Part shown: positions 1 to 44,039 of the stretch, piece after piece
Numbering within the stretch: position 1 is the first letter of the stretch
How the letters are laid out: every line of letters begins with the position of its first letter
DNA from: Mytilus californianus
Lineage: Eukaryota
Direction: 5' to 3'
NCBI RefSeq assembly: GCF_021869535.1
Contig: NW_026262712.1
Span: 41,540,001-41,604,000 of the forward strand
DNA length: 64,000 nucleotides
The notes under the pieces: model-generated
The model's input: the letters and a program-made list of their open reading frames with translations, nothing else
The model's database searches: none
Told to the model about the DNA's origin: nothing
Made by a program: the position numbers and the translations under genes

Positions 1-1140
1 AAACATCATTGTAACAAGTTGATATTGGTGATTCTAAATAACAACTATTTATTGTTTTAGTTAAAAAGACGTAAAAGGAGAGCTATATATATTTCAAAGA
101 CAGGTTTTTACTGTTTTATTACTGTACTTATTTTTATTTTTTGTGTCTTTGGTCTAATGTCTCATGACATATATCGCATATCTCATTTCATCGATCCGTT
201 TTTAAACTACTTACATATTTTGAAGACAGGTTGTTGCTGTTAAAATTTACATATTTTTAGTTTTTGTGTGTTTGGTCTAATGTGTCATGACATATACAGC
301 ATATCTAATTTTATCGATACGTTTTTAAACTACTTACATGGATTTAAAGAAAATCATAAATTCAAACAAAGAGTGAACAAAAAAAATGCAAGATAAATAA
401 AAATGATTTTTACTTCCAATTTTATGTTAATAAAAGACATTTACACTCTCACTGTGGTAGAATATAGTAGGAGATAGAGTGTAGTTGTAAAGAATGCATG
501 TTGTCAGTAAGCCAACTAGATGAGGTTTGACAAACGTCAATGATGTTGCCCTTGCAATGCAAAACTAGTAAACATCATTGTAACAAGTTGATATTGGTGA
601 TTTTAAATAAATTGTTGGAACTATAAAACTGTATAATCAATTATCTTTGAGAAATGTTGTATAACATATCGTTTTTCATAGAAGTTTGAAATAATACTTT
701 TTTTAATACTCATGATTCATGATTCTCCGATGTTTATTTTTGGGGGGTATAATATGTTGAAATCGATCTTTGATAGTTGGTCTTTAATTTATTCACAAGG
801 ATTTCTTGTCACAGGAATATCTAAAGTTAGAAATTACATATTTTAAAGACAGGTATTTATTGTTTGATATTGATATTGTTATTAGTTTGTGTCTTTGATT
901 TACTGTATCATAAATGAACATATATCACAGATCTCCTTTTATCGATACTTATTATATTTAATTTCATGGATACATAGAAAATCACAAATTCAAACAAAGA
1001 GTGAACGAAATAAATGAAAAATATATAACAGTGGTTTCTCCTTCCAAATTTATGGTTCATTAAAAATATCAACATGTTTACCATTATATTATAATCTAGT
1101 AGGAGATAACAAGTTAATCTTTGAAGAATAAAAATTGTTC
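1..1140 (+). repeat. Degenerate tandem repeat, period about 570-630 bp, with internal subunits of about 125 bp
   Basis: aaacatcattgtaacaagttgatattggtgatt at 1 and 571; aaattcaaacaaagagtgaac at about 358 and 986; sub-repeat 95-220 vs 220-340. Confidence 0.75.
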
Positions 1141-24086: not shown

Positions 24087-25049
24087 CATCGCTGCGTGAA
24101 TCAATATTAATACCAAAATATGCCATCTTTAATGAACTGACAACAATATCGTAACTTTATCCCTTCAGAATAAGTCTGTTTAAAGGTTTGGTTAGCTTTT
24201 GGGGTGATCGCCAACATTTTTGCGATTTGTATAGAATATTACCATTACAGATTAGATGTGAAATACATGAACGTATAAGATGTCTGCACGTTGATTTATA
24301 TTTACGAATGATGTCCTTGTCTTTTCTATGTTAATTATTTTGGCGTATCTTCTCATTTTTAATTTTTGAACTTAATTGGGTAATGTCTTAATTAGAATTG
24401 TGTTACAGTTTGTAATGCCGGGTCCTTTTATAGCCTATTATTCTGTTGAATCAATTGCAAGATGTACACACACTCAAGCATCAACCATCCATATGTAGTA
24501 TAACGATACAACAATATTCCAGAGTTTGTGTATTCTGTCATGATCTTCTTGATATATGGTTGTTATTTAAAAGGAAGATATTGAATCAGACTAAGTTGAT
24601 CAGTTTTAGTTATTATAAGTTATTTTGATTTTAACCTGATTTGAAACAATCTTTGTGATACGTTAATTGGTGGTTAAGTGCATCTCCGTCGTTGTTTTTA
24701 TTTACTAAATATATCAAGATTTAGTTATTAAGTTAATTGCGTCCGTACTATTTAACTTGAAATAACGGGTATCGCATATAGTGCTGTGTGTATTGCATAC
24801 TTGTGCGTCCATATTTCTTCTAGACAGTATTTGATATGGGGTGGTTTTGTATGTGACTCTTATCTGTTATCTTTGAATCTTGGTCCCCGAAAAATTGTCT
24901 TTGAACAAACATACGTTATGTCAGTAAAAGTTCTTGTAAACTATTTGCCCTATCGTATCCTATATCCTGATACAACAAACGTGATTGTCAATACATGTTG
25001 TTTACTCTACACAGATAATTAAAAAAAAAATGATTGATACGCAGGGGCA
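24087..25049. mobile_element. Deletion derivative of the 42943 element, bounded by TTAA and short inverted termini
   Basis: ccTTAA|catcgctgcgt...acgcaggggca|TTAAgg; interior matches 44820-45625. Confidence 0.6.
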
Positions 25050-25272
25050 TTAAGGGCTTTTACAGAAAATTTCCTTATTTTTCACAAAAAAATATACTAT
25101 GGGTCTCAATGGTAAAAATATCCAGTTTTTTAACCAAATGAATGTTAAAAGCGTGTACGGTGGTTAATTTGATAATTCTGCAACACATTCCTGACTTTTA
25201 TTTATAGAAAATATAAATACTCTAGAGTCACGTGACTTGAAACTGAAAGTAGGGCATATTTTTAGAAAAGTC

Positions 25273-25572
25273 AAAAGGGCAGGTGCAAGATGAATTCGGA
25301 TCGACTAAACCTTTGGTGTCTCGTCTTTGGAAAATAATACCGGACTGAAAAAGTGCTGTGCCTAGTTTTTAAGTTGAGGCTTTGTGGATATAAATCGGTG
25401 AAATGTGCGCATTTTTGTTGATTTATCCACTTTCTTGCACTTCGGGTTGAAACCATTCTCTTACTGAAGTACTTTACAACTAGGCACAGCACTTTTCTGA
25501 AAATTCAAAATGTTTTCTTTCTGCCAATACCTAAATCAAGTAATTTGGTATGGCTCTTGCACCTGCCCTTTT
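25273..25572. mobile_element. 300-bp fold-back MITE
   Basis: aaaagggcaggtgcaaga / tcttgcacctgccctttt, plus an inner pair aaaagtgctgtgcctagtt / aactaggcacagcactttt. Confidence 0.7.
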
Positions 25573-27345: not shown

Positions 27346-27610
27346 GGGAGCTACCATTTGATTTTTATGGGGGGGGGGGGGGGAGGCTAGGATGAAATTT
27401 GAAAAAAAATAGGCAGGACAGGAGTTTTGAGTAAAAAAAAAAGGCAGGATGACAATTTATGTAAAAAAAAGTCAGGATAAACTAAAAAAAAAAAATTGCA
27501 GGACCGAATAGAGTGAAAAATAAAAAGGCAGGACAGAGATTACAACTAAAAAAAAATGCAGGACAAAATTTTTCATCCTAGCCCCCCATAAAAATCAAAT
27601 GGTAGCTCCT
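27346..27610. mobile_element. Tourist/Harbinger-like MITE
   Basis: About 35-bp TIR gggagctaccatttgatttttatggggggg..ctaggatgaaa / tttcatcctagccccccataaaaatcaaatggtagctcc. Inserted at TAA/TTA in host gaaaaactaagtccatt (uninterrupted at about 27143). Internal caggac repeats. Confidence 0.8.
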
Positions 27611-28421
27611 TTAGTCCATTTATAAGTAAAATATGGAATTTATTTTTAAAAAAATTTACTTTTGAATATTATCTTATGATCATAAAAAAAGCTTCTGTCC
27701 ATGTTTGATAGAAATCCAGGATAGTTTAAGAAAGTTATTAAAATTTCAAAAACTTTAACCACAGAGTGAATATTTGTGGACGCCGCCGACGGAATGTAGG
27801 ATCGCTATGTCTCGCTTTTTCGACAAAAATATTTTATTTTCCCCATTTTTTCGCTACAATTATGAAATTTTCAGGCGACTGTGGTCCATGGGACATTTTA
27901 TAACGTTATAAAGAGAAATAACTCGAGAACAATAAAAGTGACGCAACCCAAATTCAAACTTGATCTGAGTTTTGTGGTAATAAGTATTGTGAAGAAGTTT
28001 CATTATATTAGTTTTTCATCAATTGTTTTATTATAAATTAGGCAGTTAGTTTTCTTAATTTTATTGTTTTATAATTTTCATGTTGGCCTTCAAGTCGGCC
28101 TAACAGAACAGGTTTTTCTCATTATTGAAAGCAGTGCAGTTGCCTGTAATTGCTTTCATCCACTTCATTTGAACATGGGTGGGTTGTTGTCTCATTGGCC
28201 GTTATACCACATCTACTTATTTTAATATATAAAGTTAGAGAATGGAAACCAATTTCTGGATGTACATTCGGACAAGGATAACATTTAATGCCCCCTACGC
28301 TGCATGACTTGAAATTAAGTAGATATAAATGGTTATAGTTTTCCCCTACAAACATGACAAATGGGAACAATTTGCTTTTTTTTCTGAATTCTTCTCTTCT
28401 TTTAGGTTAAATCTTTCCAGA

Positions 28422-31400
28422 ATGGATATCTGTAATTTTGCAAAAGTTATTCTGACACGGGCAACAAAGGACATATCTTCATTGCAATGGTGGAAGAAAC
28501 AAAATTCTGACAACAATCGCCCTATTCTTACTGACAATTCTCTGAACAACAACTCTGACGACAACTCTGGCGACAACTCTGATGACAACTCCATTCAAAA
28601 ATCTTACACATCCAACTTCAGTTTAATGGAAAGGCACCAGAACTATATGATGTTTATGGACGGATATCCAAAAATGCATGTTGAATACGATTACTTCAAA
28701 AAAAGGATAAGTCGACTGCAATCATATTTGACAGAAAAGAAATATTGGAAAAGCGGTGGAAAATCTGAAGAACGTAATTTATTTCTGGATTATTTTGGCT
28801 TACAACACTGGTACAACCTTCAAAAATTGGAAAAACAAAATCATACGCTTGAAAAATGCAATCCATGCAGATCAATCCATATCGATATGTCTTCTCTACA
28901 CAAATCTCTAGACAAAGACTCCCGTCAAATTTTGGAAACATGCCAGACAGCTACAGACCATTTTATTAATACCGTATCCCCGACATCAATGACACAACAG
29001 AAAGGAGTAAAAAATGCCAAGTCTTTCATCAACATCGTTCAACCAATAATAGAAGAGAAAGTCAATATAAAATTCAACTGTAAATTAGCCGACTCATTAT
29101 CTCCTTCAGCAATTACCGCAGCAGAACATCTACAGGAAATTAAGAAAGCAGTCACGGTAAGCAAAAAGAAATTTGAGGAAGTAATGAAGGATGATGGAAA
29201 TGATGTCACCAACTTTCTTTCGTCTGGAAAATCTTTCAACCAATACCATCGGGACAGAATGGCTGGATTTTATGAATCAAAAACAAGAGCAGAGGAGAGG
29301 ACAGAGAAGTTAATCCGTCAAGAATCAGCAGGTAAGAAGAAATCGAAAAAGCACCATGGAAATTTTGAAAACTACTCCTTCGATAGAACTGGCTTTCTTA
29401 ATGAAATGACAACCAAACCATCAGGATCTGATATTAACTGGACTCTAATGGCCAAAAAATACAATTTGCAAATCAACGGTAAGTTTCCTGCCAATGCTGG
29501 TCAAGTCATTTTAGAATACGCAAGGAAGCAGGGCATCAACACACAGACTCACAATAAAGAAAAAAAGGTAAGCTCACGAGACTATCTCAGAAGGATTAGA
29601 AGGGCCAAGAACACAATTTATATGAGGAATAAACAGCACAGTCTACCAACACCAAGGACAGGTAAAGCCATCAAAGAGGATGTTAAAAGAAAGTTAAAAT
29701 CTGGAGAACTTTACATCGGCGTCAAGATAGCAGAGAAGACAAAAATTACAACAGTAATTTCTCCAGAAGGTGAGCTGATACCAAAAACCATCCAACTATT
29801 TGCTAGAAAAATGCCATTAACCTACATTCGAGAACAATCCCTTAAAGACCAGTTACATCAAGGTCTATTTAAGTATACAAGTGACGAGGAATATGACAAA
29901 ATGGATCTTCAATTAGTTAAGGACAAGCTGTTTAAACTGGGACTTACATCACCTGAATCTGAAGACCAGACAAGATCCGTTTTGAAATCCACCGAGAGAA
30001 CAAGAAAGTTGAAAATTTGGCATGACCACAGCGATATTTTGAACCACAGCTACATTTGTTTTACCGTTTCTTTTCTATATGATGAGGCTAACTTCTATAC
30101 CGACCAAAAGTTTAAGCTTAAACATCCCGACAAAAAGCCCATTAATGTCCAAGCATTAGTAGAAAGACCTAAACTTTATATTTTTGGACAGTCCGGAAGC
30201 TCAGACGAGGAGCAGACATTGTATACAAGGACGCGACTTGAAGATTTACAAGAAATACATTTACCAACTCGTGTGACTCATGATGACCATAACCTTACAG
30301 TTTTTGATGATTTGAGAGTTTTCAGTGGGGATGGGCCAGCTCGTCAATTTGAATCAGGTCAACAAAGGGGGGGGGGTAATTTTTCCTGTCTTTGTGGCAT
30401 TCCAGCAGTAGAACATGGCAATTATGTGAGATGCTTTTCTATCAAACCTCTTAGTCTAGATGAAAGATGCCAACTAGCTACTTCAACCACAAGTCTTAGA
30501 AAACTGAAGCAAGGCATTTTAAGTCCCTTTCAAAATCTTAAAAAAGCCGATCTGGTAAAGGAATTAAAAGCGAGGAATATAGAAACAACAGATAAAGACC
30601 GTAAACAACTACAAGAAGACCTTACTCAACTACTCCATGGAATTAGCAGACCACCAGCTTTGATGATACCCGAACCCCATCTTCCAACTGAAACTATCAA
30701 CATCCCAAGTTATGAAATTTTGTGTACTGAACCGTTGCATGACCTGACAAATGTTATCCAGAATATCATAGCCGAACTTCCCTACCATATCCAGGATAAA
30801 GAAGCACAAAAAGAGTTCCAAAATTTCTCCCAAACAACAATAGGAGACAAGAATCAAATAAAAGGCTCCGATGCACGTCTATACCTTGTTAAATTAGCTA
30901 AATTTGCAGCAAACCTACATGAACAAAAGAAGATTGATAAAAACACCATCCAGATGATCGAATCCCTCGTTGAAATAACTAACATTTGCTATTCAAAATA
31001 TGAATGTCGTTCACCAAAACAGATTCTAAGACTTTATAATCAATGTTTCCTATTTGCTGTTACTTGCAGGATAGTTATTGGAATTCCGTCTAACCCAAAA
31101 ATGTCAAAAAGAAAATTTTTTGGAAGTCATTTTCACAGTGTAACCGTCCATCTACCAGAATGTTTAAGAATTTTTAATTTAAGATCAATTGTAACAGAAC
31201 AAGAGGAACGCATTTTTGGGGACTTGCGAAGAATTTCAGAAAATACCACCAATAGGCAGGCCCAATTCATCTGTGACAATGCTATGCTTCGTTTCAACAG
31301 TCAGCAAGCTGCAAAAACCGACTACTTTACCATTCAGGAATCTGTAATTCAAAAACAAGCTCACCTTCTGGCTCCACGTCCAAATTCTACAATTCCGGCT

Positions 31401-31731
31401 CATATCGTTTCAAAGCAACCAACACTTCTGCAAGCTCATCTCGAAAGAATTTCAGACTTTTTACTTCCTGGTAACGACATTTGGTGGCATTCCACTAACA
31501 ACAACTTAATCTTCCATGACGGCCCTGATGAACCATGTTACCGTAACCAGGGTCCCCAGCTGTCCCACTTCAGATCATCGTCCCTGAAAGATGAAAACGC
31601 AAAACTGAAAGTAATTTGGCAGACTATCATGACCCAATTCCAGGAAAATCAACTAATTCTACCATTACGTAGACTCAAGGCATTTGATGTTGATGGAAAT
31701 CCATTCTTTGTAACTGTCAACACAACTGAAG
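28422..31731 (+). CDS. Large first coding exon: N-terminal region, RAG1-like catalytic core, SAP-like insertion
   Basis: Uninterrupted reading frame of 3310 nt ending at GAAG|GTAGG. Contains the D, D, C-x-C, LH, H-x4-H and E motifs. Confidence 0.9.
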
Positions 31732-34700
31732 GTAGGAAAATATCATTTATTGCTTAATAACTTAAGTTTTGTTTCTACATTCACTACTCCAGTCATGAAA
31801 TAACTATTCAATTTATCTGAGGTCTCCAAAACTCAAAATTCCTTATATTCTTCTGTTTCAAATTAATATTAAAATAAAAAAGTGTGGTATGGTTGCCAAT
31901 GAGACCAAATGACCAAAATCAATACACTTACACACAAGTTATTGTCCTGCAACTAAAAAAAAGGCTTGTTTTTTGCCCATTTTTGGCCCCTAATTCCTAA
32001 AATTTTGAGGCAATTACCCCCAAAATCAATTCCAGCATTCCCTTTGTGATATGGAACCTTGTGGTACAATGTCAGAGAGATCCATACACTAACACACAAG
32101 TTATTGTCTAGAAGTTACAAAAATGCTTATTTTTTGCCCCTAATTCCTTAACTGTTGGTACCATAACCCCCAAAATCAATCCCAACCTTCCTTTTGTGGT
32201 ATTGAACCTTATGGTAAAACTTCATAGAGATCCATTCACTTAAACTACTAAGTTATTGTGCGAAAACCAATGTGTTTTTCGGACGACGACAATGACGCCA
32301 AACGTCATACCAATATACGACCGCAAAATTTTTTCCGGTCGTATAAAAAGTAAAAGTGTTGCAGATGATAGTATTTAACATTTTCTTATTTCGAATGTAT
32401 CTGAGGTCTAATTGGCTATTTAAAAATAACCAAAGTTTAAAATTTGTTAATCATAATTTTCTTTATTATTACATATTCAATAGAAAATTATTTGGAGGAA
32501 GAAGATCAAACAGCTACATGTGATATAGATACTGTCAAAGCTCATGACACGATCATTAATGAACCAGAGAATGAAGAGAAAATTGGTAATTTGTTATTTT
32601 ACAATTTTTACAACCATAGTATCAAAATATACCTGATTTTTTTTTTGCATTTCAGAAGCCTCATTTCTGTTAACAAGCTACATATTTCTTCCAATCTGAA
32701 AAATAAAAACCCAACCAGCTGAATTTAAAATTTAACTTTTTATAAAGATACATGACCTACTAGCAACTAGAATAATTTATATTTTTTATTCAGCAACAAT
32801 TTGATTTAATAAAATTACATTTGAACAGTGTATGGCATTCACATGAATAAAGGCCTTTTAGCCTGAGTAAGTAATAGAATATTGAACTTGAAGGATTTTA
32901 TTAATTTTTAAAACATTATTTTACTATGTTATATTTTCAAGAGAACTTGCATTCATTTTTTCAATCCAATTTCTTTTATTCTAGATTCTAAGTCTGAGTC
33001 AACAGAAGATTATATTCCGAATATTCCCATTATGCAAGGTAATGTAGATTGTTTGACAAATAAAGTTCAAAATGTTTGTTAAATGGGCAACTTTCATTTT
33101 GTTGTATTCAATTCATTTTTTGGTATTATATATTTGCCAAGTTTACAGGCAATTTCATGTCCTTAAAGTCTGCATGGGTATCTTCAACCTAGGTATATAA
33201 ATGAGATTAAAAGTTTATTGAAAAAAAGTTTGTAACCTTAGTAGACAACAAATTCAGGTATTCAATACTTTTTCACCAACCTTCACTTTCTTGTTTGAAA
33301 ACCAGTGAATATTCATTGCTAGACATCTGTACATCTGTAAAGAATAAATCTCATGGTCAGTGTACATGTACATGTTTATTTAAATAAACGAAAATTGCAT
33401 CATTTTCTTATAACAGACCAACCAGAAGTACCAGCAATAGACCACGAGAGAAAACAGGAAAATACTGAAACCAAGGAGAAATACAAATCATATATTAAAG
33501 GTAAATAATTTTGATAACCACATATCTGATCATTTTAGGTAAAACAGTTGTTGTGCCTCAGCAGTATATGAATGATTCATCTAATTTTTAAACACCTTGT
33601 ATACATGTAGACTCCACACAGTAAAGAACTTGAAAAATAGTATTTACAAGTCTGTACTGTTGAAGACTTAATATTCCTGTCAAGATGTCTTTTGTTTATT
33701 TTAGTCATTAGGTTGCTGTCTCATTAAAGTTTAATGTTTCACATCCCCTTTTTTCATATGCTTACTTTTTATTTTGTTTTCAAATAAAAATGCTCACTTT
33801 AACATGTTTAACTTACTGCCAAATTGCAAACAATGATATAATGTACCAATCATATATTATTAAATAATTATAAAGATACTTATATTAATTTAAACACTCT
33901 GGTTAGTGATTTGATATATCTAATAAACAGACTTTGTTGAGGGCAGGATTGTGAGTGACCTATAGTTAAACTTCTGTGTCATTTGGTGGAGAGTTGTCTC
34001 ATTAGCAATCATACATCTTCTTATTTCTATATTTCCACATCATTCAGATACAAATATGTTTTAATTTCAGTTTTAAGATGGACTGTAGAACCATGCAACA
34101 ATGATGTCCAAGAAAGTCTGTTCATCAAACCAAAAAAATTACCAGGTAATTACACAAGCTTCATATTCTAATTCTAAATAGTGATCTGATATATCAAAGA
34201 CTATGTTTTTTTATGTTGTTGGATTGCTGTTGACCACTGTTTTCCAAAAAAAAATATTTTTAATTTCAGCTAACAATTACAAGAAACAACCAACATGCAA
34301 AAGGAAACTATTTGAGTCTGAGGTTTCCAATCAAGAAATTGGTAAGTATTAGTAATTTTACCCGAAATTTGGTACTTTATGTACAGCAAAGTATAAAGTG
34401 AAATGAAATTTCCAAAGAGTTGTATTCAAATCAATTTGGTATTGTAAATAAAGAATTAATATGATGCATGTTATTAATCAATATTGTTTTAAGTTATGTG
34501 ATATTTGTATAGATTATAATTATTATTACATTGATAAAATTTTGTTAAAAACTCATTATAATATACTACATATATACTTTTTTATGCTTCAGTATCATGT
34601 AGAAAGAAGACAACATTTGATCTGGTTGTCCAACTACTTGGCCCATCATCAGATGTGGATGACTGTCTTAAGTACAGGGAATTGAAGCAAAAACACCCCG

Positions 34701-34888
34701 GTCATAAATCTTTCATGTCAGCTTTTGATCAATCTTTCTCTAAGCTACAGATTCAGGTCAGTAAGAGATATTTTGCCCTGAAAGAGGAGACAACAAAAGA
34801 TGATGGAAAGGAGAACAGGGAGAGTCTGTTAGCTGACAAAGAGATTGCTCAAAAGCTGCTTGATCACTGGGGAATGTACTACTTTTAA
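28422..34888 (+). CDS. Intact multi-exon RAG1/Transib/CMC-like DDE transposase-derived gene, about 1330 aa; coding exons 28422-31731, 32484-32585, 32985-33038, 33417-33500, 34071-34145, 34270-34341, 34593-34888
   Basis: 1142-codon ORF 28329-31757. A polypyrimidine tract with AG acceptors at 28405 and 28420 precedes the ATG at 28422. GT donor at 31732. All six downstream introns are GT-AG, phase 1, and splice in frame to TAA at 34886-34888 (3993 nt). AATAAA at 34930. Motifs: WHD (D at 30024), SGDG..G..CLC (D 30330, C 30387), EPLH (H 30738), FHSVTVHLPE (31131-31160), TEQEE (E 31197, E 31206). Confidence 0.85.
31925..32345. repeat. Repeat with two internal units of about 155 bp, in the first coding intron of the RAG1-like gene
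   Basis: acacaagttattgtc...gcccctaattcct...cccaaaatcaat occurs twice, followed by gacgacgac. 26915-27830 is similarly organised. Confidence 0.65.
32484..32585 (+). CDS. Coding exon 2 (ENYLEEEDQTATCDIDTVKAHDTIINEPENEEKI)
   Basis: caatag| acceptor, |gtaatt donor, 102 nt, phase 1-1, no stop codon. Confidence 0.75.
32985..33038 (+). CDS. Coding exon 3 (DSKSESTEDYIPNIPIMQ)
   Basis: ttttattctag| acceptor, |gtaatg donor, 54 nt, phase 1-1. Confidence 0.7.
33417..33500 (+). CDS. Coding exon 4 (DQPEVPAIDHERKQENTETKEKYKSYIK)
   Basis: ttcttataacag| acceptor, |gtaaat donor, 84 nt, phase 1-1. Confidence 0.7.
34071..34145 (+). CDS. Coding exon 5 (VLRWTVEPCNNDVQESLFIKPKKLP)
   Basis: ttttaatttcag| acceptor, |gtaatt donor, 75 nt, phase 1-1. 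Confidence 0.7.
34270..34341 (+). CDS. Coding exon 6 (ANNYKKQPTCKRKLFESEVSNQEI)
   Basis: ttttaatttcag| acceptor, |gtaagt donor, 72 nt, phase 1-1. Confidence 0.75.
34593..34888 (+). CDS. Terminal coding exon 7 (VSCRKKTTFDLVVQLLGPSSDVDDCLKYRELKQKHP...LLDHWGMYYF*)
   Basis: ttttatgcttcag| acceptor; phase 1 continues into the frame of ORF 34655-34888; AATAAA follows at 34930. Confidence 0.8.
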
Positions 34889-36308
34889 TGTCCAGTGCAC
34901 TAAATAATAATTCTTGAATGTTACATATAAATAAACTTTACCAAGTTTAAATTCATACCTACTTAACTTATATAAAAAAATGGAGATGTGGTATGATTGC
35001 CAATGATACGATTATCTTGAATTGACCAAAAGGACATGGATGTAAGCAGCTATCGGTCACTGTACAGCTAATAGATTTGAGAAATACATGTACAATGTTC
35101 TAAATTTTACAAATTATACTTGTATATTTCAAGTTTAAAATTTTTTAATTTTTTTTTTTTTTTAGTCTCATGACAGGTGTTTAACGTCAACTGGCAAATA
35201 TTACATGCATATTAGGACTAGAACATGTTAATGATATATGAATATGAACCCTGCTTTGTATTATTATCAACAACCGTTACATTAATATACATTTAATAGT
35301 GAATTGAGAAATTAAACAATTGTATAATGAGCACTTTAATATGTTAAATGGTGCACTGGACATTTTTATATAAGTGTGCACCCTTAGTGACTTGGATCAC
35401 AAGGCTATTTTCATATAGGCAAAATGCATAAAAGGGGGAAGGGGGCAGGTTGTTAAGAGGGTACCCTGGTAACACTTTTAAACAAGGGATAATTACAAAC
35501 TACCATGACTGAATATGCGTGTTGAATCCTCAGAATAATTCCTGATGTATCAGGGCTGGAATATTTGACTTACTGAAAATTTAAACAGTATGCAATAATA
35601 GACCAAAATTAAGGAAGTGTGATAAAATTGCAAATGACACAATTATTCTGCATAGACCAACAGACTAGAAATGTAATATCCCATTAATATAATCATGATA
35701 AGAATAAGGAAATGTGATATGATTGAAAATGACAAAATTTTAGATCATAGTTTTGAAGGTGGGCTTCAACAATGAGCAAAACCAATACCATGAAGCAAGA
35801 TACAATTTAATTTTGCATGAAAAAATTGAGAAATGATTCAAACCAGTAAACCTTACCTACACATGTACAGCCTGATTTATGCTAAAGCAAAATATGAAAA
35901 AATATTACCGCCAGCAACCCATGTAAACAACAGGCAATTACAAAAAGACAAAACAATGGCACATCAGAACCGTTTTAATTGCTGCTATTCCATGTGAACT
36001 TTAAAATCACAATTTGACCTTCAACAGGAGCACTTTCTATAACCTTGTTTATACTACATTCATTTTCAAAACCTGCCCGTTTTTTAAATAGACCTTGTGG
36101 TTAATATGAAAGGATTTATGAAGGGGACCTCTTCAATGGACGGACATGGCCGATGCTGTATTCATCTTCAGTATAAACTGTTTGAAATTTAAATACATTT
36201 TGTAATTTTGTAATTAAGTCCATATCTGTAAATCTGCAGGAAAACCTTATTAATTATGTCATATTGAGACTCATAGGGTGAAAAAAAATGGGAACTTAAG
36301 TCAAATAA

Positions 36309-36899
36309 TAGTGTTTCCCCTATCACATAAAAAGGGCATCTACAGCGTACAAAAATTTATAAAAAGGGCACCTACAGTGTATGGAAAATTAACAAAAGGG
36401 CACCTACAGTATGCTGAAAACAAGAAAGGCAATAAATTGTCATATTGCAGTATGGACTGGCAATTGTTGATGGAATTAGAACTCAAGATAGCAAATGTGT
36501 TGTTTCAAAATATGGAGATTAGGATATAAGATCTGAAAATCTAGTTCAAAATTTCACTTCAATTAGTTTCAGGGGAGAGTTCTGATCAACAAAAGTTGAG
36601 CCCCTTTTTTAAAACCAGGATTCACAGTATAAATGAACTTGTAGAACTTTGCAAGATAAGCGGATTAACTTTAATCACAACTTTATAACACCTGTTGTAA
36701 ATGTTAATCAGCTGAGGGTCCTAAACTTGAAACTCAGAAACATGAAGACAGGAAGAAAAGGCATTTTTTTGAGACAATGGCGTCACCCAAAGAAGTGAAA
36801 AAAGGGCATGGCCTCATGTATCAAGACAAAAAAGGGCATGGCGTCATTTAAATAGGGCATGGCGTTTATCCATTCTTAACATGCTTGGGGGAAACACTA
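36309..36899. mobile_element. hAT-like MITE with AAAGGGCA subterminal repeats
   Basis: TAGTGTTTCCCC...GGGGAAACACTA. Three aaaagggca(c/t)ctacag copies at the left end and three agggcatggc copies at the right. aaataa lies on both flanks. Confidence 0.7.
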
Positions 36900-37230
36900 A
36901 AATAAATGTCAGCTTTTAAAATAGTTTCATACAATTGCAAGTTTGATTCAAATACAATTTTCAAATATATTATGACAATGGTACCAGTGAATTCCAGTTT
37001 GGTTCAATAATAAGCATGATTAGAAGCTTTGTCCTGAATTCTTTTTTTTTTCGAAACAGTGAATACAGCATCAGCCTCATAACCTGTACTTAAGTAACCG
37101 CCATGAGTACAACCAGAGATTTATACCAAGTTTCCAATAACATCAGGATGATACCACTGTCAGGATATGACAGAAATTTACCTAATATGACTTAAAAATA
37201 TACTGGATAAGACAATGATTTACTCGATAA

Positions 37231-37490
37231 TCCCAGGGGTGTGGAAATTTGAAGTTCAACCCACAGGATAAGTACATCCATTCAACGGGACAAGACAAAA
37301 TCTGAATTTAAGAGTCTTTCCTTCAACGATCTGATATACTACTAGTATACGCAAGGTCAGTGTGGTTGTTCCGCGCTATACCTTTCAATCTTTAAATAAT
37401 ACTAAACGGTCATTGACAGTGTTCTGAAAGAATTGAGGGTCAGTATGGGTTTTTCTACGCTATACCCATATTCCAAAGACACCCCTGGGA
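37231..37490. repeat. Small element with 12-bp inverted ends and an internal direct repeat
   Basis: tcccaggggtgt / acacccctggga; ggtcagtrtgg...cgctatacc occurs twice inside. Confidence 0.45.
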
Positions 37491-40400
37491 TATGACAACA
37501 TAATTTACCGGATATGACACAGCAATTCACTGGATTTGACACAGACAACAATTAATGGATATGACTTGACTCAATAATGTCACACTGACATGTACTGTAA
37601 TCATTATGGTAATTATAATTATTTTCCCTTTTATAAAAAAAAGTAATGTTAATCTTAATTTTAGGTATCCAGGTGATGGTTAAAATATCTGGTCATCTAA
37701 AATGTGTATAAGAAACAGTATCATGGTAGGTTGGCCATAGGGTTGGTCATGTGATTTATTATGATCTGTACCGTTTTGAAATAATTATGACAAGTGTTTT
37801 AGCTTCTCATCTAGGATTTTATAAATATTCTGCTAAATTTCTAGTTTTTTTATATAAAATGGTAATGTCTATAATCATTGATAATGTTTAGACATGTTAA
37901 AGTTTTGTACACTGTTTTTGTGTGCATTAAACATTCTTCATTCAAAGAGTAAAATTTAAGAAATAAAAGATGAAAAAATTAATAAAATAATTCAAAGTAG
38001 TTTAAGTACCAGAAATTGCAAAAAGGGCCAACATTAAAATTATAATGACCGGCATTATAACAACAATATCAACAATTTTCATTTAAATTGCAATTAAAAT
38101 TTGCTTTGTTTCAAAGAAGGTGTACTGGTGTCAAAGAAGGTGTAATAAAAACAGTGGTTTCAAAGAAGAAGTAAAACAAACAGTTGTTTCAAAGAAGAAG
38201 TAAATGGCATTTAAGGGTTTTCTTGCTGTGTAAAATTCTCCCCGATTCATTTCATGCCATATTTTGTATTGCATAATTTAATCAGTCCAAAACCAGCACC
38301 TTCAGGAAATTCTGATATTAAATGAAACTGAAAAAGTATATGATTTTGAAGCATTTTAATACATGTATAGTTTGGAAAAGCAATTATAACTTCTTTTAAA
38401 TAAATTTACAAGCTTTTTTTCATCACTCCCAGCAGAATATACTCATAAATTAAAAAATCAATTAATATTGAACAACGTATACATGTATCAGGTCCATTTC
38501 AGTTTAGAAAATTTAGTTATAAACTGAAAAGTTCATCTAAAAAAAATTCGGAAAACTCAACTAATTAAAAATTGTTAAAAGTTATCATTACACAGCAATT
38601 GTTTTTTTTTTAAATTATTAATTTCTCCTATTGGACTGAAATTTTGCAATGCGGTGGTGGGTGGGTAATGCAGCCAAGATTGTGTAACATCTTGCCAGTC
38701 ACAAGCCTGGAAGGAAGGTCACATACAAATTATCAAAAACAAAGCTGTTGAGATAATTCATGTATGTCTATACATTTTGTTTTTAAAATAACTTCAAATG
38801 AATAGTAAAGTGACCTTCTAAATGCAGAGTGAACCACCAGCAAAAGGATAAAACTAGTTTGACAAAATTTGCATCTCACAACTTTCAACTACGAAAGCAA
38901 ACATGCATTCAGTTCAGACAGTTGTTGCCAAAATTTTTAAATGTCAATATCAAACAGTAATTCATTGCATAATAATGCTTATTCAGAAGTGTGTGTACCA
39001 TGAGTGTAATGTGTACTGTAAGTGGCGTTATAACATTTATATTTTCTTATTTGTGTACAGTTCATTGTGGAGTTTTCTTTGTGGTCTTGTGTTTACTAGT
39101 AAACAATGTTGTTTTTTTTCCAAAAATCAGAGACAATAATTAAGATTTAAAAAAAAAGGCTTCAAGTGCTGTATATTAATTGCAGGGTAAAAACAATATA
39201 TACACATACAAGAGAAGATGTGGTATGATTGCCAATGATAAGTCACTGTACGACCTTCAACATTGAGCAAAGCCCATACTGCATAGACTAGTAGACTATT
39301 GAAGGCGCCAAAATGACTAATGTAAAACAATTCAAATGAGAAACTAAAGCAGTGTTCTCTCCAGATATTTCATATAGCATCCTGGTAAAAATGGAAATTT
39401 GAAATACCATCATATGTCTAAAAATTTATAGCATCACATCCATAACACAATCTATAAGAAAATCAATTCAGATAGCATCATATTCAGAAATATAGCATCA
39501 CATTACTATGATCATGATGATGCTAAAAGGTCTCTTAAGCTCATACAAATAGGTTTGTTATTTTCCAACATGTACATAGACCAGTTATCAATAGGTTTTG
39601 GGAGTACGAGTTTTTGAGTAGCATTTAAAAGGTATAAAATTTGTAAACATTTTTAAATCATTTGGAATGCATGGTTAAACATGACTGCCTTGATAAGAAT
39701 TTGATTTTAGTGACAATATTATTTTCTAGAGTTCTAGTAGATTTTATTTAACTGTTGTATCAACGAGTCTGGATGGGGAAACCTTTAATTGTATTATTTT
39801 AATTTTTTTTATCTTATTCTTTAAAAATTTTGCATTTTATGCTCTAAGTATTCTTTATATTATAGCACCACATTATTCTCTATTAAAAATTTGGCTTATT
39901 TTTTTCTATTCTTAATATTTTTAGCAATTATTTGGGCACATTTTGTCAGTTATTCTTATTCTGTAAACCCTATGCCAACTCTAATTAAAACTTATACATG
40001 TAGATATAGATGTCCATAATTTCATACTATTTAGCATTTATTATCTATTTCAAGAAAAAAAAAAGAACTTGCCTACTGGAGTATCCTTCCAATACCCAAA
40101 CGGACAACTTGGTTAACTTGGCAAAACTGAAACTGAAGTATTTGTAATGGTGGCACAGTGTAAATTTTAAGCAAGATAAATATGACTTGAACAGGACAGT
40201 ATTTCTTGTTATGCTTGATATTTTTGCACAGCAGGTCTCATTTAACATGTTTTAAAGGAGATTTTAATTAACAAGAAAGTTTCTGTTTAAACACAGATCA
40301 TGCAGATTGAAAAAGACAAGTCTTATGACATTATTTTAAGCAATAGCCTAGTTTTTACATGTAGGAAAGTTAAGCAAATAGAATTATTTTCACAGATTTC

Positions 40401-42070
40401 TACTTACAATACTCCAAGTTTTTCAAGTTTGGTTCCCCTCTTGGTAGAAGGATCCATTACATATAAATTGATATTTAAAGCAGATTTAAATACTGCATTG
40501 AAATCTAATGTTAAGAATGATGTTATCATGTGCCTGCACATTGTGGGTTTTAAAATCTAATCGGACACGGTAAAAACCCGAAACTTAACTACTAGACCAG
40601 TAAAATCACTGTTTGAATCTGTTTCACTATCTGAATTTATAATAAATGTATCTTACATGTCTTACTTGTTCAAAAGTTTTAATATTTAAATCTTTAAATT
40701 ATTATTGACAGAGATTTTCCAATCCCAAAGAGAAATATGCTCTTTTATTTCCAAATTTTCAGCTCTAAAATTCCCAATATATATTGTCTGGGACTATTAT
40801 ACTAGCGGGACTCAGGCATCCTCGGGAGATTTTGAAATAGTGTACAAGTCTTTAGAGAAAAAAGGGGGTCATTTTTTTACAAATATACATAGTTACGCAA
40901 AATAAATCGACCAAGATATTTAATAAATTTGATTATTACAGAAATGAAATTAAATATTTCATCTATCATCTACATGTATTCAAGGACATAGAATTCTTTA
41001 GTTGTCTTAAAAAGATATGTAAAAAAAACTGGCACACAGGGCATGAAGATTCCCAATTTGGAAATGATTTTTTTTTTTATTAAATAAATTTGATTGAAGT
41101 CAACAACAAAAATAAGACAAAATTTACATTTTCCCCTAGCATCTAAATCACCTCCATGTATGCTCAGATAAATAATGTGGTTACCCTCCCTTAAAATATA
41201 TCTTTTTCTGATACTTTGGACCTCAACAGCATTGAATATTTTACCTTGCAGTTATGTGTACACAAAATTGTGTACATAACAAATGGATATGTAGTCCAAA
41301 TACTTAGGACGTCTTGAAAGGCTATGATATTTTTTTGCTTTCAAACTTTAAATCGATGCTCGTCGCTGTAAAGCGTCAAAGCAAAAAAGTATAATAGCCT
41401 TTCATTAGGACTAATGGATATGTGATGTGATTACCATTGAATGAGATAACTATGCACCAAAAATTGAAAACAGTTTAGACAGCAATCCACAAAACCCATA
41501 CTATATAGCAAATTATAAGCTAAAATAGACCTCAACACTAAAGCGAGAACAACAACTATGTTATATACATGTACACAATAAACATCCACTAAATTATAGG
41601 CTTCAAGCTTTGTTCAGGCACATACAGAAATTATGTTGCTGTGCCAGGGTTAATCATATGTGTGGACACACGGAATATCAGTACCCTCAGATGTTGATTT
41701 AATTTGGACAAAGAGGGGGGGGGGGGGGGGGGGGGGGGTCACTAAGGAGAAAGCAAAAAAATTCAGGAATAGACCTTGTCATAGATATAAAATGTGGTAT
41801 GAGTGCCAAAGCTGTTTTCATGTTTGCTTCCAGATTTTCAAATGAGATCATAAATCTTAAAATCGAGAAACACTCCCAGCAGACAATATAATTGCAGATT
41901 AGCTAGGTCATCCAGTCATAAGATACATACACGGGGAAAACATGCAAAACAAGATAGAATTTCACGCTGGTAAGTTGTGAATGCGGTCTTTGCAATGAGC
42001 AATGTCAGAGATTGACACACTCGCATACTTATTTATTTTTTCCGGTGGTGCGTTACTAGAAATGGGATGA

Positions 42071-42356
42071 CAAGGGCGGATCCAGCCATTTAAAAAAAGG
42101 GGGGGGGGGGTCCTAGTCCAAATAATTATGACGTCTTGCAAGGCTATTTTAATTTTTTTCTGGGACGCCTTCCTACGTAGGAAGGCGTCCCAGAAAAAAA
42201 TTAAAATAGCCTTGCAAGACGTCATAATTATTTGGACTAGGGCGGTCCCAACTCAGGAGAAAGGAGGGGCTCCAACCATATGTCCCCATTCAAATGCATT
42301 GATCGGCCAAAAAAATGGAGATTCCAACCACCGGACCCCCCTTGCATCCGCCACTG
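42071..42356. mobile_element. GGCGGATCC-type MITE hosting the palindrome
   Basis: caagggcggatccagcc...gcatccgccactg; same family as 12256-12520. Confidence 0.6.
42112..42241. repeat. Perfect 130-bp palindrome (65-bp arms, no spacer)
   Basis: Centre cctac|gtagg at 42176/42177. It explains the mirror ORFs 41962-42225 (-) and 42128-42460 (+). Confidence 0.95.
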
Positions 42357-44039
42357 GATTAAATAAATCCGATTTCATATATTTTTCTCAGTATAGTTTG
42401 GTTCTAACCACGTGTGTACCATGCTTGCCGAAGCTAAATTTGTTGTTTACTCATTTCTAGTCATTTTTTAGATGCTGAAAAGAATAAAATTGAAAGCAAA
42501 CAACTTATAATTCTTTAAGCTTACATATTTGTTAGCTGTCACTTACTGTTCTTCATATATTTTCACACATTAGAGAAAATAATTGCTGGTGCAAGGTGCT
42601 TTCATTTCTGCCGACTGCAAAGCATCTAAAGACGGCGATCGGCTTCTGATTGGTTGTTATTCTCAAGTAGGCGGGGTCTGTAAGCCGACGATCAAGGCAG
42701 CAAAAACAGCTATTGCAACCGTTTACAATATAATTTAAGTTAAAAAAAAATACCGTATGCGTGTTTCAGTAATTAAATTGCATCATATCGGTATAAATTT
42801 TTCATCCGAATGCACGCAAGTAATTTGTATTCAACAAATTGTATCGATGGACGCTGCTTACGGAATCCGCCATTAATGAATACATAATGAGGTAATTGCA
42901 GAGTTACCTCCTCCTGACGAAAACTCCTCGAAAATGCCTTAACATCGCTGCGTATGTGTGGTATGTTTGGGTTATAGACATTGACGTAAATACAATGTTG
43001 TGTAAATGAAATCAATGGCTGTAAAACTATTATTTTTGTTAAAAGAACATGTTTATTCAAAGCATTCAAAAGATGTATCGGAAATGTGTTCGTAAATTAA
43101 ATGAATGTCACGGCAAACGTATACCATTGCATACACTTAGGAGAAGTTACAATATATGTAATGGTCACTCGTCAGTTAATTGTTTTGTTATGTCTTGAAA
43201 TTTTTATATTTCAGTCATGAATTTTACGGATCAAGTTGCTGCGATGGACCAGACGCCCTTTCAAAGCATGTCATATTCTGTGGTATGTATTAAATTTCGG
43301 GTATTTCAAGCGTAACACACACAAACACACACACTATCTTGTACACACACTTTGAGATATAAATATTCCAGCGTTCTTGTCATTCAGAATTTTCTTTCAA
43401 AATGGAGTATACAACTTGTGATCGTCTGTGTTTATACTCGACACATATTGTGTTTACCAAGAACATATTACGTATAACTGTTAACACTTATACAATGGCA
43501 TGTATCTATTGTCTACTCAAAGCTACATTTTGTCACAATCTAATTTTAAATTCGGTCGAACAATGTATTGTTCCAATCAAAATGCATATCCCCTTTTCAT
43601 TAGGATTAGGACTTGTAACTGTATAAACCTTAGTGACAACAGTTTATGTATTGTGTAGTAGACCACTAAATAAATAATTCTTTGAGTGCAACGACTGTCA
43701 ATCTTCTGATGATCCCTTTCCACGTAAACCTAGGTCGAATAAAAAATCTATACTTCTTTACGCCATACGGTTACTGTATAAATTGTGTATCATTCGCACA
43801 TTTTTTACAATCCCAATCATATGTATCATCTTTAAATGTCTGATTCATCACTTTAAATGGGGTTTCAATATTGATATCAATAAAATCAAGCTGTATAATT
43901 ATCTCTTGTTTCCTTGGTGTACTTTCGCCTTTTGGTTATTTCGGACAATCAATGTTAGTATTACTACAAGCAACTCATATAAATCAAATAAAAAAGTACA
44001 ATGAAAATATAAGAAAGTCATATAGAAACTCATTTGCGT

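What the first reader, a model, noticed from the sequence alone, without database searches (positions are those of the whole stretch)
28422..34888. Intact RAG1/Transib-like DDE recombinase gene with near-RAG1 active-site geometry
Seen: one open frame contains KIWHD (D 30024), FSGDGPARQFESGQQRGGGNFSCLC (D 30330), EPLH (30738), FHSVTVHLPE (31131) and TEQEERIFGDLRR. Established (mouse RAG1 recalled from memory): KESCD600; GYD708EKLVREVEGLEASGSVYIC727TLC; DALH795; FH937KTLAH942VPE...SEGNE962SGNKLFRR. The second Asp to Gly (+9) and to first Cys (+19) spacings are identical to RAG1. FH-x4-H-x-PE is identical. The ExxE lies one residue closer than in RAG1, and the D-to-D spacing is 102 versus 108. 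This is the C..C / LH / H-x4-H signature shared by Transib, RAG and CMC transposases. Inference: a catalytically intact member of a RAG1-related lineage that may not be annotated as such. It is not a RAG1 orthologue, since no RING/ZnA or nonamer-binding domain is recognisable.
Basis: partly seen in the sequence, partly recalled or inferred. Interest (0 to 1): 0.9.

Follow-up and report, generated by a model that had tools for sequence, protein, structure and literature searches.

The report
Mussel transposon with RAG1-like transposase
An apparently intact gene in a mussel genome encodes the cutting enzyme of an 18-kb jumping-DNA element whose predicted core fold matches RAG1, the enzyme that assembles vertebrate antibody genes. 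This kinship is expected for its transposon clade, but public protein databases do not annotate the family.

Summary
A 1142-codon ORF (28329-31757; real start M32 at 28422) carries every motif at the stated coordinates. D566, D668, E957/E960, C687, C689, H804, H936 and H941 are kept in 63-69 of 69 homologues.

The gene lies in a true transposon, 25040-42952 (17.9 kb). It has imperfect inverted ends (CGCAG...TTAAGG) flanked by TA on both sides. The same ends sit in unrelated flanks in M. coruscus, M. galloprovincialis and M. edulis. M. edulis holds at least four ~99% identical copies, two of them with intact ORFs.

An RNA contig from a related species confirms five GT..AG phase-1 junctions, giving an in-frame tail that ends at 34888. 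A sixth junction, for an optional exon, rests on gene models only.

No Pfam model hits the family. A SAP domain is inserted in the zinc module. No Chapa/RING domain and no RAG2-like partner were found.

The scan's earlier notes on this stretch (SAP insert, exon tail) agree. Verdict: real, probably autonomous, a new member of a known kind.

The parts
25038..25039 (.). TA flanking the 5' end (one copy of the putative 2-bp target-site duplication)
   Evidence: Read directly from the sequence. The same TA lies next to the 5' end in L008, L003, L009 and L010.
25040..25057 (+). 5' terminal inverted repeat, CGCAGGGGCATTAAGGGC. Imperfect similarity to the other end continues to about 25073.
   Evidence: DNA homology of M. 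coruscus L001 and M. galloprovincialis L003 to the window starts here, and their upstream flanks are unrelated. The alignment to the 3' end is.
28422..31731 (+). Coding exon 1 of the transposase (residues 32-1135 in ORF numbering). As an unspliced ORF it runs on to the stop at 31757.
   Evidence: The splice donor G|GT at 31731/31732 is seen in the RNA contig.
29385..29528 (+). Conserved three-helix segment (ORF residues about 353-400; N358, G360 and Q361 of the N-terminal model are nearly invariant). It is a candidate site-specific DNA-binding (HTH-like) module, followed by a basic stretch.
   Evidence: Alignment A3 and N-terminal model ma39d5600217f. The function is inferred; there is no significant PDB match.
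29772..31322 (+). Catalytic core (ORF residues 482-998) that superposes on mouse RAG1 544-1004 (pre-RNase H, RNase H, ZnC2/ZnH2, CTD). Catalytic D566 (30024-30026), D668 (30330-30332), E960 (31206-31208). Putative Zn ligands C687 (30387), C689 (30393), H936 (31134), H941 (31149). Also H804 (30738).
30522..30632 (+). SAP domain inserted between the Cys pair and the LH motif (ORF residues about 732-768)
   Evidence: Family profile against PDB 1zrj SAP, E 0.01. Pfam SAP matches 13 of 56 family members, best E 1.7e-7 and 2.5e-7.
31323..31724 (+). Extra C-terminal alpha/beta domain (ORF residues 999-1132) with no counterpart in the RAG1 core alignment
   Evidence: Confidently modelled but outside the RAG1-aligned range 3..519 of the model. 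Conserved in the family.
32484..32585 (+). Optional 102-nt phase-1 exon (E|NYLEEEDQ...ENEEKI)
   Evidence: Present in gene models P0043 and P0052. AG and GT borders read. Skipped in the RNA contig.
32985..33038 (+). Tail exon (54 nt)
   Evidence: RNA contig junctions, GT..AG
33417..33500 (+). Tail exon (84 nt)
   Evidence: RNA contig junctions, GT..AG
34071..34145 (+). Tail exon (75 nt)
   Evidence: RNA contig junctions, GT..AG
34270..34341 (+). Tail exon (72 nt)
   Evidence: RNA contig junctions, GT..AG
34593..34888 (+). Last coding exon, ending with the stop codon at 34886-34888
   Evidence: RNA contig reaches 34753. The motif FDLVVQLLG...CLKY..LKQ.HP is also present in a 49%-identical paralogue, P0069.
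34889..42933 (.). 8-kb non-coding 3' part of the element. It holds nested repeats and a 130-nt palindrome at 42112-42241.
   Evidence: Colinear with the 3' parts of M. edulis copies at 71-89% identity. No ORF of 90 aa or more, and stops in all frames of the conserved pieces.
42934..42952 (-). 3' terminal inverted repeat, CGCAGCGATGTTAAGGCAT read on the minus strand
   Evidence: Pattern search: 2 matches against 0 expected. The 579 nt ending here are homologous to the 3' end of M. edulis copy L008. Alignment to the 5' end is.
42953..42954 (.). TA flanking the 3' end (second copy of the putative TSD)
   Evidence: Read directly from the sequence. L008 also has TA at both ends.

Best explanation
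The ORF is the transposase gene of a large (17.9 kb, 25040-42952) cut-and-paste DNA transposon in a Mytilus-type mussel genome. The element has imperfect terminal inverted repeats and is flanked by TA.

Shown: the transposase belongs to the clade that unites EnSpm/CACTA, Mirage, Chapaev, Transib and RAG1 (CMCT). Its core (residues 482-998) is predicted with high confidence to have the RAG1-type arrangement. This is an RNase H-like DDE domain (D566, D668, E960) interrupted by a helical module. That module carries a Cys pair (C687, C689) and a His pair (H936, H941) at the positions of the RAG1 ZnC2/ZnH2 zinc ligands.

Inferred from RAG1 and Hztransib biochemistry, not shown here: an N-terminal helical region with a conserved HTH-like segment, together with the inserted SAP domain, recognises the ends. 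The DDE site nicks at the TIR border. The free 3'-OH attacks the other strand to release the element, leaving hairpinned flanks. The element then integrates with a 2-bp stagger at TA.

The gene is spliced: one 3.3-kb exon plus five or six short phase-1 exons add a C-terminal tail of about 160-195 residues, conserved in a 49%-identical paralogue (P0069).

The window's copy has an intact reading frame. Whether it still moves is unknown. Sister copies in M. edulis that are ~99% identical, two of them with intact ORFs, argue that the family was active very recently.
For: ORF and motifs. Family size: 2938 clusters at 50% identity with E<=1e-3. Named members come from Mytilus, oysters, scallop and pearl oyster, all labelled 'uncharacterized'.

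CMC kinship: Atlas Transposase_21 models reach TM 0.51-0.55, against 0.50-0.54 for RAG1. The structural neighbours of a cnidarian family member are Transposase_21/DUF4218 and Plavaka, TM 0.55-0.61. PMC12730594 states that EnSpm, Mirage, Chapaev, Transib and RAG1 share the C(2)C and H(3-4)H motifs.

Transposon ends: the same terminal sequence lies in unrelated flanks at the window, L001, L003, L006, L008, L009 and L010. TA/TA flanks occur in the window and in L008. M. edulis copies are ~99% identical over more than 10 kb at four loci, and L005 and L006 encode the full 1105-aa protein.

Selection: window against the M. coruscus copy L001 gives dN/dS 0.31 (27.5 synonymous, 33.5 non-synonymous changes).

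Splicing.
Against: No sequence-profile method links the family to any named transposase. Pfam gives nothing but SAP for 56 members, and the family HMM does not find RAG1 in the PDB even at E<=10. The clade assignment therefore rests on predicted structure and short motifs.

The termini are CG...CG, not the CA...TG usual in CMCT.

The TA duplication holds in only 2 of 3 complete copies (L009 has TA/TC). L001 and L006 have AA and AG at the 5' side.

The two TIRs of the window's copy agree at only about 13 of 18 positions (about 23 of 34 when extended).

Raw RNA reads from what is probably the window's own organism (run X21, about 6% of the run read) put no read on exon 1. The spliced RNA contig comes from another species and carries indels relative to this ORF.

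Active-site clustering and zinc geometry could not be measured. The hairpin mechanism is by analogy only.
Confidence: 0.85

Rival explanations
1. The family is a genuine early branch of the Transib/RAG1-like lineage, sister to Transib and RAG1L rather than to EnSpm/Mirage/Chapaev. It would then bear directly on the origin of the V(D)J recombinase.
Against: No CMC structure exists in the PDB, so RAG1 and Transib are the only possible solved matches. Against predicted models, CACTA and Plavaka transposases match equally well or better. No Pfam RAG1 domain model is hit even weakly. The TSD is 2 bp, against 5 bp for Transib (the latter from my own knowledge). No second gene resembling RAG2 lies in the element. 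No NZD/Chapa or RING domain is present.
Confidence: 0.08
2. This copy is a domesticated host gene derived from such a transposase. It would be kept for a cellular function and no longer be part of a mobile element.
For: The 1111-codon frame is intact. dN/dS is 0.31 against a copy from another species. The multi-exon tail is conserved. RefSeq models in Crassostrea virginica have several isoforms.
Against: The gene sits between recognisable TIRs with TA flanks. Closely related copies lie at different sites with unrelated flanks in other Mytilus genomes and are frameshifted or deleted there: L001 has indels of -2 and +1 nt, and L003 lacks 29037-30566. All catalytic residues are retained, which domesticated transposases often lose. 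No expression was seen in the sampled RNA of the window's own organism. A dN/dS below 1 between TE copies is expected from selection on the active lineage before the copies inserted.
Confidence: 0.04
3. The resemblance to RAG1 is a generic DDE / RNase H similarity. The protein would belong to some other cut-and-paste superfamily (hAT, P, MULE, Kolobok and so on).
For: The P element, ISCth4 and Hermes transposases also appear in the structural hit list.
Confidence: 0.03

Closest known systems
RAG1 core (mouse RAG1 544-1004; e.g. PDB 6xnx, 4wwx)
   Different: About 12% identity and no HMM-level similarity. C-x-C here rather than C-x2-C. A SAP domain is inserted. There is an extra 130-residue C-terminal domain and a spliced tail. 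The 480-residue N-terminus is unrelated, with no NZD, RING or NBD. There is no RAG2 partner. It is a mobile-element gene with TIRs, not a host recombinase.
Transib transposase (Helicoverpa zea Hztransib, PDB 6pqx/6pqn)
   Different: This protein is roughly twice as long (HzTransib chains are 450-480 residues in the PDB). The TSD is 2 bp TA, not 5 bp. The termini are CGCAG, not CACAATG-like (Transib values from my own knowledge). The element is far larger, at 18-21 kb.
EnSpm/CACTA transposases (Pfam Transposase_21 / DUF4218) and Plavaka
   Same: Predicted structures match as well as RAG1 does (TM 0.51-0.61). The transposase gene is multi-exon and alternatively spliced. The element is large. The C(2)C / H(3-4)H motifs are shared (PMC12730594).
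   Different: No Pfam Transposase_21 or Plavaka hit in 56 members. The ends are not CACTA/CAC...GTG. The TSD is 2 bp rather than 3 bp. No subterminal repeat arrays were found near the ends.
Mirage and ESTA lineages of the CMCT clade
   Same: Short TSD: 2 bp in Mirage (my recollection of the Repbase classification) and TA in ESTA, whose transposases also hit RAG1 by HHpred (PMC12730594).
   Different: ESTA is described from rust fungi and carries a TET/JBP gene, and none is present here.
Chapaev / Chapaev3
   Same: Animal host range (lancelet, sea anemone, Hydra, molluscs). Distant similarity of the transposase core to Transib/RAG1 (PMC4411706).
   Different: Chapaev transposases carry the N-terminal Chapa (NZD-like) double zinc finger, sometimes with a RING (PMC4411706 Additional file 5; bioRxiv 10.64898/2026.01.24.700457). 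This protein has only one H..C-x2-C..H motif and no such fold.

Membership tests
CMCT clade (EnSpm/CACTA-Mirage-Chapaev-Transib, incl. RAG1; Kojima 2025, PMC12730594) | DDE catalytic triad on an RNase H-like fold | tested here: met
   D566, D668 and E960 are near-invariant in 69 sequences. In the model D566 lies on a strand, D668 follows a strand directly, and E960 lies on a helix. The fold matches RAG1 and Transib. Spatial clustering of the three residues was not measurable.
CMCT clade (EnSpm/CACTA-Mirage-Chapaev-Transib, incl. RAG1; Kojima 2025, PMC12730594) | [quoted passage not shown] | tested here: met
   C687-x-C689 here and C-x2-C in more distant members. H936-x4-H941. Kept in 65-69 of 69 sequences.
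CMCT clade (EnSpm/CACTA-Mirage-Chapaev-Transib, incl. RAG1; Kojima 2025, PMC12730594) | TIRs and TSDs of 2 to 5 bp | tested here: met
   TIRs at 25040-25057 and 42934-42952. TA/TA flanks in the window and in L008, TA/TC in L009.
CMCT clade (EnSpm/CACTA-Mirage-Chapaev-Transib, incl. RAG1; Kojima 2025, PMC12730594) | 5'-CA..TG-3' termini ('in most cases') | tested here: not met
   The termini are 5'-CGCAG...CTGCG-3' in all seven copies examined. The paper itself allows exceptions.
Transib superfamily / RAG1-like (RAG1L) | Recognisable sequence similarity to the RAG1/Transib core (Pfam RAG1_RNase_H, RAG1_ZnC2, RAG1_ZnH2 and related models) | tested here: not met
   No such hit in 56 members. A4 (31 members) was scanned at E<=10 and A1 (25 members) at E<=1. 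The family HMM does not find RAG1 in PDB sequences.
Transib superfamily / RAG1-like (RAG1L) | RAG1-core three-dimensional architecture | tested here: met
Transib superfamily / RAG1-like (RAG1L) | 5-bp TSD and heptamer-like CAC(A/T)(A/G)TG termini | tested here: not met
   2-bp TA flanks. The termini are CGCAG(G/C/T)G. The definition is recalled from Kapitonov & Jurka 2005.
Transib superfamily / RAG1-like (RAG1L) | Adjacent RAG2-like gene (for RAG-like / TransibSU elements) | tested here: not met
   No other ORF of 90 aa or more lies between the TIRs. The conserved 3' DNA has stops in all frames.
Chapaev | N-terminal Chapa (NZD-like) zinc-finger domain | tested here: not met
   The Cys/His pattern of Additional file 5 of PMC4411706 is absent. 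The N-terminal model is helical and has no PDB match.
EnSpm/CACTA | Transposase_21 (tnp2) domain, CACTA/CAC..GTG ends, 3-bp TSD | tested here: not met
   No Pfam hit, and the ends and TSD differ. Only the predicted fold is shared. Repbase now files Chapaev and Mirage under EnSpm (PMC4455052), so a Repbase label of 'EnSpm' would still be possible.
Mirage / ESTA | 2-bp (TA) TSD together with sequence relatedness to the type elements | tested here: inconclusive
   The TSD length and TA agree. Sequence relatedness is not testable, because no Mirage or ESTA sequences are available to the tools.

The most novel reading that the evidence does not exclude
The family is a deep metazoan lineage of the RAG1/Transib/CMC clade that has not yet been classified. 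Its marks are a SAP insertion in the zinc module, a unique 480-residue N-terminus, an extra C-terminal domain with a spliced tail, CG...CG ends, TA targeting and an element size of 18-21 kb. On this reading it is still transposing in Mytilus. It would then offer an experimentally tractable, naturally active enzyme that bridges CMC transposases (no structure solved) and RAG1/Transib.
Probability: 0.25. Interest if true: 0.65.

Novelty: new member of a known kind. Interest (0 to 1): 0.45.

Why it matters
RAG1 arose from a transposase of this broad clade. The only members studied biochemically and structurally are RAG1, amphioxus ProtoRAG and one moth Transib. No CMC-type enzyme has a solved structure in the PDB copy searched here.

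This mussel family has a very confident RAG1-like model, intact catalytic and zinc residues, defined ends, and near-identical intact copies in M. edulis. That makes it a practical candidate for testing whether nick-and-hairpin chemistry and the zinc-module architecture are ancestral to the whole clade.

It also matters for annotation. Thousands of such proteins in bivalve, cnidarian and other genomes are currently labelled 'uncharacterized' and match no Pfam model beyond the SAP insert. Some gene models fuse them to neighbouring genes.

Tried and rejected
1. Sequence-only identification failed. Pfam on the ORF and on 56 relatives found only SAP. phmmer and a family HMM against PDB sequences found nothing relevant.

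2. The same ~40-nt motif recurs at 31866, 39213 and 20318 and is a very abundant interspersed repeat.

3. A first estimate put the 3' boundary of the M. edulis element at ...GTGACAAAACAGT. That was wrong. Copies differ by insertions there, the element continues, and the true 3' end carries the inverted CGCAG...TTAAGG terminus.

4. I first read L001 and L003 as orthologous loci. This was rejected because their flanks differ from the window's exactly at the TIR.

5. A search for a second gene (RAG2-like or TnpA-like) between the TIRs found nothing: the ORF lists and tblastx against M. edulis copies show only non-coding conservation.

7. No subterminal repeat arrays lie near the ends.

8. Pfam found nothing in the tail exons.

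9. Yuan & Wessler 2011 could not be read. The motif statement is taken from PMC12730594 instead.

10. A phylogeny with reference Transib, Chapaev, Mirage and EnSpm proteins could not be built, because no tool delivers those sequences and typing them from memory is not acceptable.
Full report
**What is there.** The window is AT-rich (about 30-37% G+C). It holds one very long open frame, 28329..31757 on the plus strand, 1142 codons. One detail differs from RAG1. The cysteine pair is C-x-C in this bivalve clade, while more distant relatives have C-x2-C.

**Family.** A word-indexed search found 42 relatives. The named ones come from Mytilus coruscus (94% identity over the core), M. edulis, M. galloprovincialis, oysters, a scallop and a pearl oyster. 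All are 'uncharacterized' and none has a Pfam domain apart from an occasional SAP. The exhaustive HMMER search found 2938 clusters (at 50% identity) with E<=1e-3 and 320 with E<=1e-30. In a 69-sequence alignment (A2) the putative catalytic and metal-binding residues are almost invariant:
- D566 63/64, D668 67/68
- C687 66/67, C689 65/67
- H804 69/69, H936 69/69, H941 67/69
- E957 69/69, E960 69/69

**Sequence methods do not name it.** Pfam gives only sub-threshold SAP for the ORF. For 56 family members it gives SAP (13 members, best E about 2e-7) and nothing from the RAG1, Transposase_21, Plavaka or DUF1258/1280 models. The family HMM finds only a SAP domain (1zrj, E 0.01) among PDB sequences.

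**Structure names it.**
- AlphaFold2 on residues 480-1142 with A2 gave mean pLDDT 93.9 and pTM 0.94.
- Foldseek against the PDB returned RAG1 in ranks 1-43 (E 3e-10 to 1.5e-7, about 580 alignment columns). BbRAGL followed at 1e-4 and HzTransib at 3e-4 to 1e-2. Unrelated noise begins at rank 50.
- In Swiss-Prot, eight RAG1 entries score about 1e-9 and the next entry scores 1.5e-3.
- In the model D566 lies on a beta strand, D668 directly follows a strand, and E960 lies on a helix. This is the expected RNase H-like DDE layout.
- I could not obtain coordinates, so side-chain clustering and zinc geometry remain untested.

**Is it specifically RAG1-like?** No. No CMC-type transposase has a solved structure in the PDB copy searched here, so the PDB can only return RAG1 and Transib.
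- Against predicted structures in the ESM Atlas, RAG1 fragments give TM 0.50-0.54 (378-411 residues). Plant and fungal CACTA transposases (Transposase_21, DUF4218) give 0.51-0.55 (398-430 residues).
- The structural neighbours of the cnidarian member of this family are Transposase_21/DUF4218 and Plavaka proteins, TM 0.55-0.61.
- Among the top 100 feature-based hits, 35 are Transposase_21 clusters. RAG1 clusters share somewhat more features, 170-175 against 147 of 256.
[quoted passage not shown] The paper names this the CMCT clade, with TSDs of 2-5 bp and mostly CA..TG ends.

The protein fits that clade. I cannot resolve which branch it belongs to.

**Extra modules.**
- A SAP domain (ORF about 732-768, nt 30522-30632) is inserted between the Cys pair and the EPLHD motif.
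- Residues 999-1132 form a confidently modelled alpha/beta domain outside the RAG1-aligned range.
- The Chapa/NZD double zinc finger that defines Chapaev and RAG1/RAG1L N-termini is absent (PMC4411706 text and Additional file 5; bioRxiv 10.64898/2026.01.24.700457).

**Gene structure.**
- One RNA-run contig of 3767 nt (run X1, another species, about 97.5% identical) is colinear with exon 1. It then joins 31731|32985-33038|33417-33500|34071-34145|34270-34341|34593 onward, always across GT..AG.
- These exons are 54, 84, 75 and 72 nt long, all in phase 1.
- A further 102-nt phase-1 exon (32484-32585) is used in gene models P0043 and P0052 but is skipped in the contig. This points either to alternative splicing or to a model artefact.
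- Five junctions therefore have RNA support in a relative, and the sixth rests on gene models. This agrees with note s1-328222.
- Two caveats apply. The contig has indels relative to this ORF, so it comes from another copy that is probably frameshifted. Raw RNA reads from what is probably the window's own organism (X21, about 6% of the run sampled) gave no read on exon 1.

**It is a transposon.**
- M. edulis has at least four loci (L005-L008) that are ~99% identical over more than 10 kb. At L005 and L006 the fetched gene translates to an intact 1105-aa protein.
- Their common 5' boundary is CGCAGTGATATTAAGGCAC, with unrelated flanks. L008, L009 and the window carry the inverted copy of that sequence downstream.
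- In the window the 5' end is CGCAGGGGCATTAAGGGC at 25040. Homology to the M. coruscus copy L001 and the M. galloprovincialis copy L003 starts exactly there, and the upstream flanks are unrelated. These are therefore separate insertions, not orthologous loci.
- The 3' end is CGCAGCGATGTTAAGGCAT on the minus strand at 42934-42952. The last 579 nt are homologous to the 3' end of L008.
- The element is thus 25040-42952, 17,913 bp. L008's element is 21.4 kb.
- TA directly flanks both ends in the window and in L008. L009 has TA/TC. The 5' flanks are TA in L003 and L010, AA in L001 and AG in L006. I read this as a 2-bp TA target duplication, with moderate confidence.
- No second gene was found between the TIRs.

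**State of this copy.** Against L001 the ORF is 98.15% identical, with dN/dS 0.31. L001 carries frameshifting indels (-2 and +1 nt), and L003 has lost 29037-30566. The window's copy is therefore the intact one among the three close relatives examined. Its two TIRs agree at only about 13 of 18 positions, or about 23 of 34 when extended. Current mobility is unknown.

**Mechanism.**
- Shown: a conserved DDE triad, conserved Cys and His pairs, a RAG1-type fold, TIRs and TA flanks.
- Inferred by analogy with RAG1 and Hztransib: end recognition by the N-terminal region and SAP domain, a nick at the TIR border, hairpin formation on the flanks, and 2-bp staggered integration at TA.

**Comparison and novelty.** The kind is known: CMCT transposons, whose RAG1-like motifs were published in 2011 and 2025. 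CMC elements are recorded in bivalves (PMC10294476), and Repbase files Chapaev and Mirage under EnSpm (PMC4455052). I could not query Repbase or Dfam. Because the family is abundant in well-mined genomes, it may already have a Repbase name. Features that do not fit any one described lineage are:
- CG...CG ends
- the TA TSD (like Mirage or ESTA)
- the SAP insertion
- the absence of a Chapa domain
- the lack of Pfam coverage
- the 18-21 kb size

I therefore rate it a new member of a known kind, with a 25% chance that it is an unclassified deep lineage.

Noticed in passing
window 34548-38839 compared with L005 16897-20792, L007 27354-31240 and L008 17072-20951: The 3' non-coding part of the element is colinear and 71-89% identical between the window's subfamily and the M. 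edulis subfamily. The transposase core is only about 67% identical, and the 5' non-coding part does not align. All frames have stops. The cause is unexplained: it could be recombination between subfamilies, a functional non-coding region, or missed small exons.
   Followed up: partly
window 31886-32482 (intron 1): A very high-copy repeat. RNA word depth is 7e4-8e5 in two runs and about 680 reads per bin in the raw-read run, and many reads begin at 31976. It is probably an abundant SINE-like or satellite-like element nested in the intron.
   Followed up: no
window 42112-42241: A perfect 130-nt palindrome inside the 3' part of the element (self-BLAST). A homologous piece lies in M. edulis L008 at 24295-24406.
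   Followed up: no
window 24078-24096 (minus strand): A solo terminus, CGCAGCGATGTTAAGGCAA, of the same TIR type. It abuts a different repeat that starts at 24096. It is probably the end of a related, perhaps non-autonomous, element just upstream.
   Followed up: partly
window 28189-28229, 31866-31905, 34969-35009, 39213-39238, 20318-20343: A motif of about 40 nt, GTCTCATTGGC..ATACCACATCT, recurs in both orientations. Two copies happen to bracket the gene and look like TIRs, but it is an abundant interspersed repeat.
   Followed up: yes
window 27341-27615: A MITE-like unit with 34-nt arms that are 97% complementary and 207 nt apart, nested in the 5' part of the element.
   Followed up: no
L006 6164-6170 and L008 4116-4122 (M. 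edulis): The first seven bases of the TIR, CGCAGTG, differ from the V(D)J RSS heptamer CACAGTG at one position. This may be chance, and the window's own ends read CGCAGGG and CGCAGCG.
   Followed up: no
L002 (M. coruscus), gene model P0052: The public gene model fuses the transposase tail exons to unrelated downstream exons, which looks like a chimeric annotation. P0001 (L001) skips the Cys-pair region, and L001 carries a frameshifting 2-nt deletion there (30367).
   Followed up: partly
same genome, about 2.6 Mb before the window: Earlier scan note s1-314008 reports another RAG1/Transib-like transposase next to a chromodomain gene. It was not examined here.
   Followed up: no
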